Assembly: GCF_040938485.1 (NCBI RefSeq)
Contig: NW_027272265.1
Location: 186,001 to 250,000, forward strand
Direction: 5' to 3'
DNA length: 64,000 bases
Source of the DNA: Diadema antillarum
Lineage: Eukaryota
Shown: positions 34,140 through 62,073 of the stretch, one piece after another
How the letters are laid out: each line of letters starts with the position of its first letter
Position numbering within the stretch: the stretch's first letter is position 1
The notes under the pieces: model-generated
Told to the model about the DNA's origin: nothing
Databases searched by the model: none
The model's input: the letters and a program-made list of their open reading frames with translations, nothing else
Made by a program: the position numbers and the translations under genes

Positions 34140-34383
34140 ATGGCAGAATATGAATCTAACCCAGGACCTGGGGGTCAATGTGAGCCATCCACCATGCCAA
34201 CAACACCAGCTAGGCAGCCTCCAACTCCAGGTCTCCTTGAACTCAGGGAGCTGAATATCAACAAGGGCCAGATCACCCTCGTGGAAGAAAAATTCATCCA
34301 GCGGACAATATCAGACCAGGTCTACATCCTAAACAGAAGTATCCACAGTCCGCAAATCCTGAATGCTGCAAGGAATGTTGCAG
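34140..34383 (+). CDS. TTC22-like: TTC22/IFIT-like TPR-TIR protein 1, coding exon 1
   Basis: ATG 34140; 244 nt ending GCAG|gtgagc (phase 1). MAEYE...PTPGLLELREL...AARNVA is homologous to gene 2 exon 1 and to PVPGLLNCDL...AVRNYI in gene 3. Confidence 0.85.
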
Positions 34384-35688
34384 GTGAGCCAGGATGAGAG
34401 AGGAGTATGAAACAGATCTCATACAGGGCTACAGTGCATTATTCCAGAAGTTTGTTATTCTGGAGGCTTGATATACTGTAGGTTCATTATTCCAAAGGTT
34501 TGTTAAGCCAAAAATTATTTAAGGTACATTATTCTGATAGTTTGATTATCCAAAAATGAAATAAGGTTTGTTATTTTGAGGGTCTGTTAATCTGATATTG
34601 AAACAGGGCTTTTAATTCCAAAGGTTCATTCATATGCACCATTTGTTCATTTTAAGATTAATTAACATCTTCAGGTGCATTACAAGTACATTGCAACATT
34701 TACATCATGTCCATATCTTATATTGAAATGGTATATAGACCCAAGCTAAGGAGCACATTTATCTGTTGTTTTTGCTTTAAACACACATGCCGATGAAGTT
34801 TGGTCTTGACCAGTGATCCTTTTACTTTGAGCATGTGCATCCACAATTGATAGGTGCAGCTTCCACGCATACATTACATTTGCCAAGTTTCACATGGATT
34901 CCTTGGACAATTCTTACATTAACAATTCACAAAATTGAATATGGACAGACAGGACACGTACCCCAAACAAAACAAAAAATATCCTGTCAAAGGAATATGT
35001 GGTACATCTTTAACCCGTTGCTTAAGGGAACCTGTAAGTTCAAATTTATTTCTGCTGACCCCATGCAGGTGCCTACTTTGCACAGAACCAAAGAGTTTGT
35101 GAGCCCATCAGTGCACGCTCTATTAATACCTCATGCCTGATCAATATTTTGCCTTGTTTGATGGCACATATAGTTGAAGTGGAAAGGGGATATATGTACC
35201 ACTTGACTACTTTCACACAAGCAGATTACCAAACTGTCCAATCTCCATTGCCCTGCAAAAAGAATTTCATTTTTCAAGGGTAATGAATGCTCTTGGAGAA
35301 TTGCGGGAGGAACGGGTTAACTGATGAAAGATGTTGGCTGTAGTGTCAGAAAAATTGATCATGTTCTTATGGTTTCTGCACACTGAAATAAATCATTTGG
35401 AATCATAATGTTGTCTTTCAACAAAACAATTTCTAACAATCCACTGAACTGGACAATGAGTTTGTGGAGGCCATCAAAACTGTATTACTTTCTTTATAAC
35501 TCTGTTACAACTTAATGTGTTTACAGCATCAGTGTGGTTCTGTGCTACCCTCACAAAGGCTGTTATGACTATACCAATTTTAGAGGCTGTTAGGATCATA
35601 TTAAGATTACATCAAACATTTTTTTCCTTCTTCAAATGTCTATGTAACAAACACATGTTTGTGATTGTGTGATTTTTACATTACCTAG

Positions 35689-59400: not shown

Positions 59401-59769
59401 AGACTGGTACTGTGTATGCCATATATTTAGCAAAGTCTAATTTTTCGCAAATAGGGACTTCCTGACAATTTTGCGGGTAGTTGAATTCCGTCATGGAGTA
59501 CAGCAATGGGCAGAGAAGTGAATGCATGCACATCACACATTCACGTCAGGATCAGAATTGATATTTTTGCCTGTTTTAAAACTTATGAATATCATCCGAC
59601 TGCAAAAACTGGCTGACAAAAAAATAAAACCCCCACAAAATATATGATGCATACAGTATATGACTGAACCAAATAAAAGATATGTTTTAGAGGAGGTTGT
59701 AGTGTACAGTATGGGCTGCTTTTATTGGCTGCTTCTTTCTTTGTCTTTCTCAATTTCAGGACAAGCAGC

Positions 59770-62073
59770 ATGGCATGCGCAGTACCCGTAAAAGCAGACA
59801 ACACATGCGCAGATCTGGACCTCCTCTCCAGTCTAACCTCAAGGATGTCCCACTTGACGGTAGATCATGGCAATGGTAGACAACAATTAAGCCCTCCGGT
59901 TCCTGGCCTCCTCAACTGCGATCTCATTGTTAACTCTGCATCCTTGACAAGTGAACAGAATACCCAGGCAAGGCGAAAGCTCAACAGGAAGCTGCCCCTC
60001 CTACAGAGAGAGTACAGGGATCGTCCCATTCGGCATGCTGTCCGAAACTATATTGGTTTGCTCTATTACCGTACAGGGAAGAAATACGAGGCCATAGGAT
60101 GTTGGGAGGAGACAGTCCAGGAAGATCCGACCAATCTAAATGCCATGGATGATCTTGTGACAGCCTATCGCTTTCTAAATCGATACAAAAAGTCCAAAGA
60201 ATGGGAAAAGTCCTTACAGGATGTCAAACAAAAGTTACAGGATGATCCGGGTGAGAGGCAGATGGTATACGCCCGATGCCAGGCGGAGCAGGCTTATGCT
60301 GCCCTTTGGGACATCCACACAAATACATGGATAGGACATCAGAAAATGAAGAGAAAAGTGGAGCTTTATGAAACTGCCCTGCAATATGCAGGTTCCTGTA
60401 TCTCAAAGGAGGAAAAAGAAGACTGGCATTTGGGGATTGGGCAAGCCTATGAGCGCGTGGCCCACATGTACTTTCGTGCAGGTCCAAAATGGCATGACCA
60501 GTACCTGTGTTCGATGGACAAAGCTGTGGAACATCTACACTTTTGTTTGACTTCCGCTGACCACCCATTTCTCAAAATGGAGGCCTGGGGGGTCATGGGA
60601 AATGCTCTCACTCGTGACAAGAGATTTCACCCAAGCTCTGTACCAAGCTTTATTGCCACACACTACTTGGTAGAATGGAAGGATCCATCTCTGTGTTATG
60701 AGAGAGCTCTTGAGCTTGATCCCACTAACCCCTGGATAAAAGGGTGCTACGGGAATCTGCACTTGAAGTATGGAAGGTACGGTGATGCCTTGAACATCCT
60801 GAATGAGGCTATCAAGAAAAATCCAACCTCTGATTCCTGGTTTGCCTACGACAGAAGATCACATGTGTATCAATATTTGGCAAAAAAAACTAATGACCCA
60901 AATTTGAAGAAAAAATATTTGCGGAAGGCAGAACAAGACTCCAGCAGAGCAGAAAACTTCAACCCAAATCCAAGGACCCGTTCCACCTGCGGTGAGATCA
61001 ATCACAGTCTAGCTACTACGAGAACTACAGATGACAAGAAGAACTCTACCTACACAAAAGCCCAAGCAATGTTTGCTGAGTCCTTAGAAATCCAGGATGG
61101 ACAGTCGGTGAGTGATGTTCACTTCAAGCAGGGTAAATGTCTCCTTGAACAGGACAGGTGGTCAGCAATCCAGTCATTCAAAATGGCATTTAGTACATGT
61201 CCCGATAACACTGCCTTCCACAAAATCTTGGCATCTAGATACATCCTTCCAAGCATGCTGGATGAATACAAGTCACAAGGCACTCCAAATAACCTCCGTG
61301 CAGAGATGGCCTTTTGGGTCATTGAAACAGAATCACAGCACAAGAGTGTAGAAGTTTTTTCCATCTTAGGAAATTTGGCTAGGAAATGGAAGCACCAGAA
61401 GGAGGTTCTTGATATCATGGAGTACTTGGTGAACAAGCCATCCAACCACCACGATACTGATGCCCTGATTCAAAGAGGGCTTGAGACACTTAAAGAAACG
61501 CCATACCGCCGGTCAAACTATAAAAGACTCTGTGAACTCTGTGAACTGCAGAGGACGCAAAAACGAGGAGTAAACAAGACTCTGCCTGACTCGCCCTTGC
61601 CCGATCACAATGCACCACAAACAGCCAAAAATTCTGACCACACATACGACTTTTTCGTCATCACAGCTGATGAGGACACCCTCTGGGTGCAGTACAAGCT
61701 CCTTCCAGCTCTTGAGTGCCCTCTGTTCTCCTTGAAGGGATTCTTTGCAATGCGGGATACACTTCTTGGCAGACTAACTCTCGAACAGTTGTCGCAAGCC
61801 ATCAAAGATTCTGCACATGTTCTTATTGTCCTCACTCCAGCATTAAAAGATCACAATAGAAGTAAGCATCTTATCGGGATTGCACTCCAGGGAAAAGACG
61901 AACAAAAGGTGGCCATCTTACTCCTGGAGGACACAGGCATTCCTCCTCATATCAGCCATCTCAAAAAATTCAACTTTTGTGGGACTGACTTCACAACCCC
62001 ACACTGGTTCAACTTGGCCAAGTTTCTCCTTCCCAGTGATGAGGAAGCATTGCAACTGATGAGCAGTGGTTAG
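59770..62073 (+). CDS. TTC22-like: TTC22/IFIT-like TPR-TIR protein 3 (767 aa, intronless CDS)
   Basis: Acceptor ttctttctttgtctttctcaatttcag| at 59759, then agcagcATGG at 59770. VPGLLNCDL, AVRNYIGLLYY, DPTNLNAMDDLVTAY, ARCQAEQAYA, EEKEDWHL, DPSLCY and QGKCL parallel remembered TTC22. TIR: YDFFVIT..DTLWVQYKLLPALE..RDTLLG..AIKDSAHVLIVLTP. Confidence 0.93.
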   Translation: MACAVPVKADNTCADLDLLSSLTSRMSHLTVDHGNGRQQLSPPVPGLLNCDLIVNSASLTSEQNTQARRKLNRKLPLLQREYRDRPIRHAVRNYIGLLYYRTGKKYEAIGCWEETVQEDPTNLNAMDDLVTAYRFLNRYKKSKEWEKSLQDVKQKLQDDPGERQMVYARCQAEQAYAALWDIHTNTWIGHQKMKRKVELYETALQYAGSCISKEEKEDWHLGIGQAYERVAHMYFRAGPKWHDQYLCSMDKAVEHLHFCLTSADHPFLKMEAWGVMGNALTRDKRFHPSSVPSFIATHYLVEWKDPSLCYERALELDPTNPWIKGCYGNLHLKYGRYGDALNILNEAIKKNPTSDSWFAYDRRSHVYQYLAKKTNDPNLKKKYLRKAEQDSSRAENFNPNPRTRSTCGEINHSLATTRTTDDKKNSTYTKAQAMFAESLEIQDGQSVSDVHFKQGKCLLEQDRWSAIQSFKMAFSTCPDNTAFHKILASRYILPSMLDEYKSQGTPNNLRAEMAFWVIETESQHKSVEVFSILGNLARKWKHQKEVLDIMEYLVNKPSNHHDTDALIQRGLETLKETPYRRSNYKRLCELCELQRTQKRGVNKTLPDSPLPDHNAPQTAKNSDHTYDFFVITADEDTLWVQYKLLPALECPLFSLKGFFAMRDTLLGRLTLEQLSQAIKDSAHVLIVLTPALKDHNRSKHLIGIALQGKDEQKVAILLLEDTGIPPHISHLKKFNFCGTDFTTPHWFNLAKFLLPSDEEALQLMSSG

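What the first reader, a model, noticed from the sequence alone, without database searches (positions are those of the whole stretch)
34140..62073. Tandem array of three IFIT/TTC22-like TPR proteins fused to a C-terminal TIR domain
Seen: three intact, colinear 762-781 aa genes, each an extended TPR solenoid plus a Pro-rich linker and a TIR (YDF box 1, RD box 2). Established: vertebrate TTC22 and the IFIT RNA-binding proteins are TPR-only, and TIR domains drive innate signalling. Inference: these are cytosolic, transmembrane-less receptors coupling a TPR ligand groove (possibly foreign RNA ends or pathogen proteins) to TIR signalling, expanded as a diversifying family. I know of no functional study of this architecture, though domain surveys may have listed it.
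Basis: partly seen in the sequence, partly recalled or inferred. Interest (0 to 1): 0.85.

Follow-up and report, generated by a model that had tools for sequence, protein, structure and literature searches.

The report
Sea urchin IFIT-like TPR–TIR gene trio
Three neighbouring genes of the long-spined sea urchin each encode a soluble protein that joins an IFIT/TTC22-shaped helical clamp to a Toll-type TIR signalling domain; this old invertebrate family is listed in surveys but has never been studied, and vertebrate TTC22 looks like a member that lost its TIR.

Summary
The window is Diadema antillarum contig JBFRCO010001377.1. It holds three intact + strand genes of 781, 762 and 767 aa, and all three match deposited D. 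antillarum protein models. Each has a TPR solenoid, a Pro-rich linker and a C-terminal TIR.

**TIR:** a family profile hits TLR15/TLR2/TLR1 TIRs at E 1e-14 to 1e-12. AlphaFold models match Hydra TRR-2 (Z 19.9, rmsd 1.4 Å) and MyD88.

**TPR part:** it is homologous to vertebrate TTC22 (E 1.5e-54; best Swiss-Prot fold hit). Its closest solved structures are IFIT5 and IFIT1 (Z 24-27 over about 420-440 residues; next TPR proteins Z ≤18). HMMER shows no IFIT link.

**Evolution:**
- The array of two intron-bearing "A" genes and one intronless "B" gene is conserved in D. setosum and S. purpuratus.
- The family also occurs in sea stars, brittle stars, amphioxus and molluscs.
- TIR-less members, including TTC22, are scattered across the tree, so the TIR was lost repeatedly.
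- Divergence is fast, but pairwise dN/dS is 0.35-0.48, so diversifying selection is not shown.

**TIR motifs:** the window's TIRs have lost the BB-loop Pro and the WC motif. The Glu position is E, K and L in genes 1, 2 and 3.

The immune-sensor mechanism is inference: I found no expression data and no functional paper. Surveys list a "TIR-TPR" class. The scan's other notes on this window cover the same locus.

The parts
34140..34383 (+). Gene 1 (A-type), exon 1. It codes aa 1-81 plus the first base of codon 82 and includes the conserved N-terminal PGLL..L..N motif.
   Evidence: ATG at 34140 and GT donor at 34384. The spliced product equals XP_071478462.1.
35689..37790 (+). Gene 1, exon 2. It holds the TPR solenoid, the Pro-rich linker and the TIR (about 37377-37787), then the stop codon.
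   Evidence: AG acceptor at 35687-35688. ORF. The TIR-only model has pLDDT 89.9 and all 50 top PDB hits are TIR domains.
46176..46404 (+). Gene 2 (A-type), exon 1.
   Evidence: ATG at 46176 and GT donor at 46405. 65% identical to gene 1 exon 1.
47570..49629 (+). Gene 2, exon 2: TPR solenoid, Pro-rich linker and TIR (about 49240-49626), then the stop codon.
   Evidence: AG acceptor at 47568-47569. 762-aa deposited protein P0170 is 100% identical. Weak Pfam TIR_2/TIR hits.
59770..62073 (+). Gene 3 (B-type), intronless, 767 aa. Residues 1-34 are disordered, the N-terminal motif lies at about aa 44-54, and helices run from aa 61 to 599.
   Evidence: ORF. AlphaFold model with pLDDT 90.2 and pTM 0.86. 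TTC22 and IFIT fold matches.
61570..61635 (+). Gene 3 linker between solenoid and TIR (aa about 601-622). It is Pro-rich and modelled with low confidence.
   Evidence: The pLDDT block for residues 601-610 is 65. Sequence.
61636..62070 (+). Gene 3 TIR domain (aa about 623-767): βA YDFFVI, BB loop RDTLLG, βC HVLIVLT, and Leu at the αC Glu position.
   Evidence: Hydra TRR-2 Z 19.9, rmsd 1.4 Å, 26% identity; MyD88 Z 19.3. phmmer against 4w8g gives E 3.5e-6. Motif positions.

Best explanation
These are three paralogues of an old, uncharacterised bilaterian family of soluble TPR-TIR proteins.

**Shown here**
- Each protein is an IFIT-shaped, TTC22-homologous TPR clamp of about 540 residues.
- A flexible Pro-rich linker joins the clamp to a C-terminal TIR domain of the TLR/MyD88/TRR-2 (scaffolding) type.
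- The genes sit in an A-A-B array that echinoids have kept since Diadema and Strongylocentrotus diverged.

**Inferred mechanism**
- The TPR clamp binds a ligand or partner: a protein, or by analogy with IFIT1/5 an RNA 5' end.
- Binding lets the TIR engage other TIR domains (TLRs or MyD88-like adaptors). The protein would then act as a cytosolic sensor or adaptor that feeds or tunes Toll-type innate signalling.
- The window's copies have lost the BB-loop proline and the WC motif. Their TIR contacts are therefore probably non-canonical, possibly homotypic within the family or regulatory.
For: - **Gene models** equal deposited D. antillarum proteins.
- **TIR by sequence:** the family TIR profile hits TLR15/TLR2/TRR-2/TLR1 at E 1.6e-14 to 5e-12, and Pfam TIR_2 matches 12 of 14 members.
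- **TIR by fold:**
  - Gene 3: TRR-2 Z 19.9 at rmsd 1.4 Å, MyD88 19.3, MAL 16.2, SARM1 15.6.
  - Gene 1, the most divergent copy: all top 50 PDB hits are TIR domains, led by MyD88, IL-18Rβ and TRR-2.
- **TPR part:**
  - Gar TTC22 scores E 1.5e-54 colinearly.
  - Human and mouse TTC22 are the top Swiss-Prot fold hits at 20-22% identity.
  - IFIT5 scores Z 26.7 and IFIT1 Z 24.2-24.6, covering nearly all of IFIT, while other TPR proteins score ≤18.2.
  - The nearest language-model clusters are TTC22 and then IFIT1/5/2-like.
- **Solubility:** no transmembrane-like segment.
- **Selection:** dN/dS is 0.35-0.48 in all pairs, so all copies are under purifying selection.
- **Synteny:** the array is conserved in D. 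setosum and S. purpuratus.
- **Range:** the architecture occurs in echinoids, Acanthaster, Amphiura, Branchiostoma, Haliotis and Patella.
Against: - No expression, induction, binding or signalling data exist. The only public runs found look genomic: the intron is covered and no splice joint appears.
- HMMER finds no IFIT relationship. RNA binding therefore rests on fold analogy alone, and the groove's charge could not be examined.
- Mouse Ttc22 knockouts are reported in a paper title as having no phenotype, and TTC22 has no known immune role.
- All three TIRs lack the BB-loop Pro. They also lack the WC of the family's WCxxE motif, and genes 2 and 3 lack the Glu. This may mean weak, altered or inhibitory TIR function.
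- In gene 3 the TIR evolves relatively faster than the TPR part (ω 0.65 vs 0.33).
Confidence: 0.5

Rival explanations
1. Negative regulator or decoy. The divergent TIR (no BB-loop Pro, no WC motif) binds TLR or MyD88 TIRs without propagating assembly, as SIGIRR or TIR-only decoys do. The TPR part tethers or sequesters partners.
For: BB-loop Pro and WC are lost in all three copies although the family consensus is RDfxPG / WCxxE. SIGIRR and IL-1RAcPb-type TIRs are among the fold and sequence matches. The TIR is under weaker constraint than the TPR part in gene 3.
Against: The same motif changes are compatible with altered partner choice rather than inhibition. The domain fold is intact and confidently modelled. 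No functional data exist either way.
Confidence: 0.2
2. Solenoid-gated NADase. As in SARM1 (ARM-SAM-TIR), the helical solenoid holds an enzymatic TIR in check until a ligand binds. The TIR then cleaves NAD+ or makes a nucleotide signal.
For: The family consensus keeps the αC Glu (WCxxE), and gene 1 has Glu at that position with the same spacing from βC as TLR2. SARM1, TIR-STING and plant or bacterial TIRs appear among weaker fold matches. The solenoid-plus-TIR layout resembles SARM1.
Against: Gene 2 has Lys and gene 3 and its orthologues have Leu at the Glu position. The closest TIRs are the scaffolding kind (TRR-2, MyD88, TLR, IL-1R), with SARM1 lower (Z 15.6 vs 19.9). There is no SAM or other oligomerisation domain. 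TLR TIRs also carry this Glu, and to my knowledge they have no reported NADase activity.
Confidence: 0.12
3. Non-immune TTC22-like scaffold. The proteins do the still unclear cellular job of TTC22 (reported as a protein-interaction and chaperone-like TPR protein), and the TIR is an accessory or decaying module.
For: There is strong homology to TTC22. The TIR was lost at least five times in the family, including on the way to vertebrate TTC22. TIR motifs are eroded in this array.
Against: The TIR is kept intact under purifying selection in three genes and in their orthologues across echinoids, sea stars, brittle stars, amphioxus and molluscs. Evolution is fast for a housekeeping gene: 82% aa identity between congeners.
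Confidence: 0.1

Closest known systems
Vertebrate TTC22 (tetratricopeptide repeat protein 22)
   Same: It is homologous over the whole TPR solenoid. Gar TTC22 scores E 1.5e-54 against the family profile, covering positions 14-521. Human TTC22 is the top Swiss-Prot fold hit at 22% identity, with residues 1-551 of 569 aligned. NCBI already names gene 3's relatives 'TTC22-like'.
   Different: TTC22 ends after the solenoid and has no linker or TIR. On the tree it nests among TIR-bearing deuterostome members, so it looks like a TIR-less derivative. Its known biology (colon cancer, no knockout phenotype; titles) is not immune.
IFIT1 / IFIT5 (interferon-induced proteins with tetratricopeptide repeats)
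   Same: They are the best solved-structure matches for the TPR part. IFIT5 4hot scores Z 26.7 with 439 of 476 residues aligned. IFIT1 scores Z 24.2-24.6 at rmsd 3.7-4.0 Å, well above other TPR proteins (Foldseek TM-by-hit 0.64-0.70). They are also the nearest language-model clusters after TTC22.
   Different: Identity is only 12-14% and HMMER finds no match. IFITs have no TIR; from my own knowledge they are vertebrate and interferon-induced and act by binding 5' ends of RNA. Neither the RNA-binding residues nor the pocket charge could be compared here.
TLR / MyD88 / Hydra TRR-2 type TIR domains
   Same: The fold and motifs βA (Y)DF, RD..G and βC match. TRR-2 gives rmsd 1.4 Å at 26% identity, and the profile scores E 1e-14 to 1e-12 against TLR15/2/1.
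   Different: The TIR is not attached to a membrane receptor or a death domain. The BB-loop Pro, the WC motif and (in genes 2 and 3) the αC Glu are replaced, and genes 1 and 2 lack the box 3 Trp.
'TIR-TPR' class of invertebrate immune-gene surveys
   Same: The domain pair is the same. The class is counted as a TIR adaptor-like category for oyster, sea urchin and others (Zhang et al. 2015, PMC4346834, Fig. 1 legend; Aplysia immunome, PMC9334734).
   Different: Those papers only count domain combinations. They give no structure, no TTC22/IFIT assignment, no synteny and no function. I recall that Gerdol et al. 2017 (Dev Comp Immunol) classified conserved TIR families ('ecTIR-DC'), but that paper is not held, so its treatment of this family is unchecked.
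SARM1 and bacterial TIR-TPR proteins
   Same: All join a helical-repeat sensor or regulator to a TIR in one chain.
   Different: SARM1 has ARM repeats, SAM domains and a catalytic Glu. Bacterial group 6 proteins carry the TIR at the N-terminus followed by TPRs (PMC7075850). BcTir/Tpr is a two-gene system. Domain order and TIR subtype differ from this family.

Membership tests
TIR domain superfamily | Significant sequence match to TIR profiles or solved TIR domains | tested here: met
   The family TIR profile hits TLR15/TLR2/TRR-2/TLR1 at E 1.6e-14 to 5e-12. Pfam TIR_2 matches 12 of 14 members, best E 2e-16. Taken singly the window genes are sub-threshold, and gene 1 has no hit.
TIR domain superfamily | Flavodoxin-like five-strand β/α fold superposable on solved TIRs | tested here: met
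   Gene 3: TRR-2 Z 19.9 at rmsd 1.4 Å over 125 residues. Gene 1 TIR model (pLDDT 89.9): all top 50 PDB hits are TIRs.
TIR domain superfamily | Box 1 (F/Y)D, box 2 RDxxPG, box 3 FW | tested here: inconclusive
   Box 1 YDF and the RD...G of box 2 are present in all three. The box 2 Pro is absent in all three although the family consensus has it. A box 3 Trp is present only in gene 3 (HWF).
NADase-type TIR (SARM1 / plant / bacterial) | Catalytic Glu in αC | tested here: not met
   By alignment and by spacing from βC, gene 1 has E, gene 2 has K and gene 3 has L. The feature is therefore not met for genes 2 and 3. Gene 1 keeps the Glu, but TLR TIRs carry it too, so this is not diagnostic. Enzyme activity cannot be tested here.
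TTC22 family | Colinear homology across the whole TPR solenoid | tested here: met
   Gar TTC22 scores E 1.5e-54 in a single stretch, profile positions 14-521. Human and mouse TTC22 are the top Swiss-Prot fold hits. Atlas feature score is 0.98.
TTC22 family | TPR-only architecture (about 570 aa, no further domain) | tested here: not met
   All three genes carry a linker and a TIR after the solenoid. They are relatives with a different architecture.
IFIT family | IFIT-type closed TPR clamp fold | tested here: met
   IFIT5 Z 26.7 and IFIT1 Z 24.2-24.6 over about 420-440 residues, clearly above other TPR proteins.
IFIT family | Detectable sequence homology to IFITs | tested here: not met
   No IFIT chain appears among the best 60 profile hits in the PDB (39 further hits were not shown). 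No IFIT chain appears in phmmer searches with TTC22 (E up to 1) or with a related fish protein (E up to 0.01). No protein named IFIT was among the 30 checked of the top 150 representatives.
IFIT family | Basic RNA 5'-end pocket with the known binding residues; interferon induction | not testable with these tools
'TIR-TPR' class of invertebrate TIR adaptors | TPR repeats and a TIR domain in one soluble protein | tested here: met
   The class is named in PMC4346834 and PMC9334734.

The most novel reading that the evidence does not exclude
IFITs, TTC22 and these proteins descend from one ancient bilaterian cytosolic sensor, in which an IFIT-type clamp that reads non-self RNA 5' ends (or another pathogen ligand) was wired directly to a TIR output. 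Invertebrates kept the fused sensor. Vertebrates lost the TIR, leaving TTC22, and re-used the clamp as the interferon-induced IFIT effectors. That would give IFITs a pre-vertebrate origin and define a new class of TIR-coupled nucleic-acid receptors.
Probability: 0.15. Interest if true: 0.85.

Novelty: new variant of a known kind. Interest (0 to 1): 0.6.

Why it matters
TIR domains and IFIT-type clamps are two central modules of innate immunity, and they are normally found in separate proteins. Here they sit in one soluble chain, in a family that spans deuterostomes and molluscs and that nobody seems to have tested.

If the clamp binds a pathogen ligand, this would be a transmembrane-less, NLR-independent route into TIR signalling. 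It would also bear on where IFITs came from; as far as I know they are regarded as a vertebrate family.

The work also gives human TTC22, a gene with no clear function, an evolutionary context as a TIR-less remnant of an immune-type protein.

The species matters too. To my knowledge Diadema antillarum has suffered mass die-offs attributed to a ciliate, so rapidly evolving immune loci with deeply diverged copies are of practical interest.

The present evidence stops at architecture, fold, phylogeny and synteny.

Tried and rejected
- **Expression and splice evidence.** The look-up of sequencing runs returned three runs of unknown kind. Their contigs cover the intron, show no joint at 34383/35689, differ from the window at several dozen listed positions (most contig pieces 95-99% identical) and have a hole at 35370-35877. 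They look like genomic DNA of other individuals, so they say nothing about transcription.
- **IFIT link by sequence.** Profile and single-sequence HMMER searches of the PDB gave only generic TPR designs, OGT and the like, with no IFIT. Thirty of the top representatives that I named were TTC22-like proteins or unnamed, never IFIT.
- **Positive selection.** Whole-gene and sliding-window Nei-Gojobori estimates gave ω of about 0.2-0.5. Only short windows reach about 1, at the linker, the N-terminus and the end of the TIR, each resting on few changes. This is not evidence for diversifying selection. Site models need more coding sequences than I could fetch.
- **AU test on the full tree.** The test on the 67-row mixture-model tree did not finish in two attempts. 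I replaced it with a 27-row LG+G4 test. The group was named after the tree had been seen.
- **Gerdol et al. 2017.** The paper is not held, so I could not check whether its ecTIR-DC classes include this family.
- **PUS7 nesting.** ORF pieces of the PUS7L region of the sister contig found no matching exons in the window, only a short repeat-like match near 27.4-27.6 kb. On that contig the PUS7L model lies downstream of gene 3 on the opposite strand. I did not pursue this further.
- **Groove electrostatics.** Charge and IFIT RNA-binding residues could not be examined because model coordinates are not exposed.

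
Full report
**1. What is in the sequence**

The window has 32-46% G+C and one N run at 17084-17252, which I left untouched. Between 34 and 62 kb there are three long + strand ORFs.

- **Genes 1 and 2.** For the first two ORFs, a short upstream ORF supplies the N-terminus through a canonical GT...AG phase-1 intron.
  - Gene 1 is 34140-34383 plus 35689-37790, 781 aa.
  - Gene 2 is 46176-46404 plus 47570-49629, 762 aa.
- **Gene 3.** It is intronless: 59770-62073, 767 aa from the first ATG.
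- **Agreement with deposited models.**
  - The spliced gene 1 protein is identical to XP_071478462.1, 'uncharacterized protein isoform X1' of Diadema antillarum.
  - Gene 2 matches a 762-aa D. antillarum protein at 100%.
  - Gene 3 is held letter for letter in the protein collection.
- **Source.** From the locus coordinates, the window is JBFRCO010001377.1:186001-250000 of assembly GCA_040938485.1.
- **Copy number.** tblastn finds exactly these three copies and no fragments.

Gene 1 vs gene 2 is 68% identical, and either vs gene 3 is 32-33%.

**2. The C-terminal domain is a TIR**

Taken singly, the three proteins give only sub-threshold Pfam TIR hits, and gene 1 gives none. Stronger tests agree that the domain is a TIR.

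- **Profile.**
  - A profile of the C-terminal about 150 residues of 14 family members hits TLR15, TLR2, Hydra TRR-2 and TLR1 TIR domains at E 1.6e-14 to 5e-12. TIRAP, SIGIRR, TRAM and MyD88 follow.
  - Pfam TIR_2 matches 12 of the 14 members.
- **Gene 3 model.** The full-length AlphaFold model (66-sequence alignment, pLDDT 90.2, pTM 0.86) has the β-α-β order of a TIR at residues 626-766. VIA-align gives these Z-scores:

| Solved TIR | Z | Detail |
|---|---|---|
| Hydra TRR-2 | 19.9 | rmsd 1.4 Å, 125 residues, 26% identity |
| MyD88 | 19.3 | |
| IL-1RAcPb | 16.9 | |
| MAL | 16.2 | |
| TLR15 | 16.1 | |
| oyster TIR-STING | 15.8 | |
| SARM1 | 15.6 | |

- **Gene 1 model.** I modelled the most divergent copy, gene 1's C-terminus, on its own (pLDDT 89.9). 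All 50 best PDB matches are TIR domains, led by MyD88, IL-18Rβ and TRR-2.

*Motifs.* The family consensus is YDFfV / RDfxPG / F....WCxxE / vIPi. The window's genes keep YDF and RD...G. All three have lost the BB-loop Pro and the WC pair. At the αC Glu position, twelve residues after βC as in TLR2, gene 1 has E, gene 2 has K and gene 3 has L. Gene 3's orthologue in S. purpuratus (P0004) also has Leu there. Only gene 3 keeps a box 3 Trp.

**3. The N-terminal part is a TTC22-homologous, IFIT-shaped clamp**

Residues 61-599 of gene 3 form an uninterrupted helical solenoid.

- **TTC22, by sequence.**
  - A full-length family profile searched against 1.84 billion representatives finds gar TTC22 (568 aa, no TIR) at E 1.5e-54 in one colinear stretch.
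  - Related proteins of other species carry the NCBI name 'TTC22-like'.
- **TTC22, by fold.** Human and mouse TTC22 are the two best Swiss-Prot matches: E 1.8e-15, 22% identity, residues 1-551 of 569.
- **IFIT, by fold.**
  - Among solved structures the top Foldseek hit is IFIT5, and IFIT1 and IFIT5 have the highest TM-by-hit values at 0.60-0.70.
  - VIA-align separates them clearly. IFIT5 scores Z 26.7 (439 of 476 residues) and IFIT1 scores Z 24.2-24.6 (rmsd 3.7-4.0 Å). The next unrelated TPR proteins score ≤18.2 with only about 250 residues aligned.
- **IFIT, by language-model features.** The protein language-model search ranks four TTC22 clusters first (0.97-0.98) and then only IFIT1-, IFIT5- and IFIT2-like clusters (0.96). 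This is a lead, not a test.
- **IFIT, by sequence.** HMMER gives no IFIT link.

Membership in the TTC22 family is therefore established by sequence. The IFIT resemblance is one of shape, with homology possible but unproven.

**4. Other anatomy**

- The linker before YDF has 10-20% Pro and low model confidence.
- There is no hydrophobic segment of transmembrane strength and no signal-peptide-like start.
- A conserved N-terminal motif (PGLL.L.L..N) precedes the first helix pair. It is modelled with high confidence although it is not helical. Its role is unknown.

**5. Family, synteny and tempo**

*Range.* Among the 150 best representatives plus the 14 first hits, about 90 carry a TIR match (E ≤ 1e-3 to the family TIR profile). 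About 50 of these also match the family's TPR part. Named members come from echinoids (Diadema, Strongylocentrotus, Lytechinus), a sea star (Acanthaster), a brittle star (Amphiura), amphioxus (Branchiostoma belcheri) and gastropods (Haliotis, Patella).

*Echinoid clades.* On a 67-row tree, echinoid proteins form one clade (SH-aLRT 100) with two subclades.
- Clade A holds genes 1 and 2, S. purpuratus LOC115929928 and LOC115929930, and a further D. antillarum paralogue on another contig.
- Clade B holds gene 3, its D. setosum orthologue, S. purpuratus 'TTC22-like' and the Lytechinus proteins.

*Conserved array.* The A-A-B order on one strand is conserved.

| Species | Record | A gene | A gene | B gene |
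|---|---|---|---|---|
| D. setosum | OZ188187.1 | 36.494 Mb | 36.512 Mb | 36.552 Mb |
| S. purpuratus | AAGJ06000006.1 | 53.339 Mb | 53.379 Mb | 53.391 Mb |

In all three species the A genes are spliced and the B gene is intronless.

*A-pair history.* The A pairs group by lineage. Between genes 1 and 2, dS ranges from about 0.2 to about 1.2 along the gene. This fits either independent duplication or partial gene conversion.

*Rate.* Orthologues in the two Diadema species are only 82% identical (dS 0.21-0.28), and every pairwise dN/dS is 0.35-0.48. That is rapid evolution under relaxed purifying selection, not demonstrated positive selection.

*TIR loss.* TIR-less members, including vertebrate TTC22 and hemichordate, brittle-star and sea-star proteins, are scattered across the tree.
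- At least five changes of state are needed.
- A tree that holds them together is rejected (p-AU 7e-63, 27 rows, LG+G4). The group was named after the tree had been seen, and some TIR-less entries may be truncated models.

The simplest reading is an ancestral TPR-TIR protein with repeated TIR loss, one loss leading to vertebrate TTC22.

**6. Mechanism**

*Shown.* The proteins are soluble, with an IFIT-shaped, TTC22-homologous clamp tethered to a scaffolding-type TIR. They are kept by selection in a conserved array.

*Inferred.* The clamp binds a ligand or partner, and this controls TIR-TIR contacts with Toll-pathway components. The proteins would then be cytosolic sensors or adaptors. I put about 0.5 on this general scheme.

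*Rivals.*
- A decoy or negative regulator (0.2). This is favoured by the lost BB-loop Pro and WC motif and by the faster-evolving TIR (ω 0.65 vs 0.33 for the TPR part in gene 3).
- A solenoid-gated NADase in the manner of SARM1 (0.12). It is conceivable only for gene 1-type copies that keep the Glu.
- A non-immune TTC22-like scaffold with a vestigial TIR (0.1).

RNA 5'-end sensing is an attractive analogy, but it rests on fold alone.

**7. What is known**

- The held literature lists a 'TIR-TPR' class in immune-gene censuses (PMC4346834, Fig. 1 legend; PMC9334734).
- Bacterial TIR-TPR proteins have the opposite domain order or are two-gene systems.
- Eight full-text searches found no functional or structural study of the animal family. 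No paper mentions TTC22 together with a TIR domain. Papers naming both TTC22 and IFIT do so only in gene lists.
- Databases already annotate the genes as 'TTC22-like', 'uncharacterized protein' or 'TIR domain-containing protein'.

The genes as such are therefore not new. Three points appear to be new:
- the IFIT-fold assignment of the TPR part;
- the placement of TTC22 as a TIR-less offshoot;
- the conserved A-A-B array.

**8. Verdict**

The receptor function and the 'diversifying' label are unproven.

I rate the finding a new variant of known kinds (TIR adaptor or sensor proteins; IFIT/TTC22 clamps) and give it an interest of 0.6.

Other notes of this scan on the same window treat the same locus from other angles: the BB-loop block, an upstream MLKL-like gene and possible PUS7 nesting.

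Noticed in passing
window 46927-62916 vs L002 (D. antillarum contig JBFRCO010001267.1, 791892-814186 reversed): A second 1.0-Mb contig of the same assembly is colinear with the gene 2 to gene 3 part of the window. Identity is 99.2% over 6.3 kb around gene 2 (dS 0.012). Beyond about 53.2 kb it drops to 88-92.5%, and gene 3 has dS 0.20 and 83.6% aa identity. The two D. antillarum gene 3 versions and the D. setosum orthologue are equidistant (dS 0.19-0.21). Either these are two very old allelic lineages of gene 3, which would hint at balancing selection, or this is a segmental duplication whose gene 2 part was homogenised.
   Followed up: partly
window 35689-37790 vs 47570-49629: Between genes 1 and 2, synonymous divergence is mosaic. 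dS is about 0.19-0.27 in codons 121-210 and 541-690, and 1.0-1.2 in codons 271-360. This suggests gene-conversion tracts. One low-dS tract abuts the variable BB loop of the TIR.
   Followed up: partly
window 6106-6327 (- strand) and neighbouring exons, about 1076-6306: An ORF starting MAAVLPAIDVIKDIISVGKYIYEAV... resembles the start of an MLKL-type four-helix-bundle protein, as another first-stage note on this window says. It lies about 28 kb upstream of the array on the opposite strand. I ran no test on it.
   Followed up: no
L002 14654-22295 (- strand); equivalent to just beyond window 63.6 kb: On the sister contig, a PUS7L/TruD pseudouridine synthase gene lies tail-to-tail downstream of gene 3. 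ORF pieces from that region found no matching exons inside the window.
   Followed up: partly
window 33761-34051 (- strand): A 96-aa ORF (…LVNLPTLAHRRTTLSRKF…) looks like the C-terminal tail of a non-LTR retrotransposon ORF2, directly upstream of gene 1's start codon. This is recognised from memory, not tested.
   Followed up: no
window 53706-54273: Two identical 73-aa ORFs lie 346 bp apart, which marks a tandem duplication. It sits inside a 1.6-kb stretch (53211-54819) that is absent from the sister contig.
   Followed up: no
window 37229 and 34100-37900: Contigs of three public runs (coded X1-X3, probably genomic DNA of other individuals) carry an in-frame 3-bp deletion at 37229 in gene 1 and several dozen listed substitutions; most contig pieces are 95-99% identical to the window. 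They give no coverage at 35370-35877.
   Followed up: no
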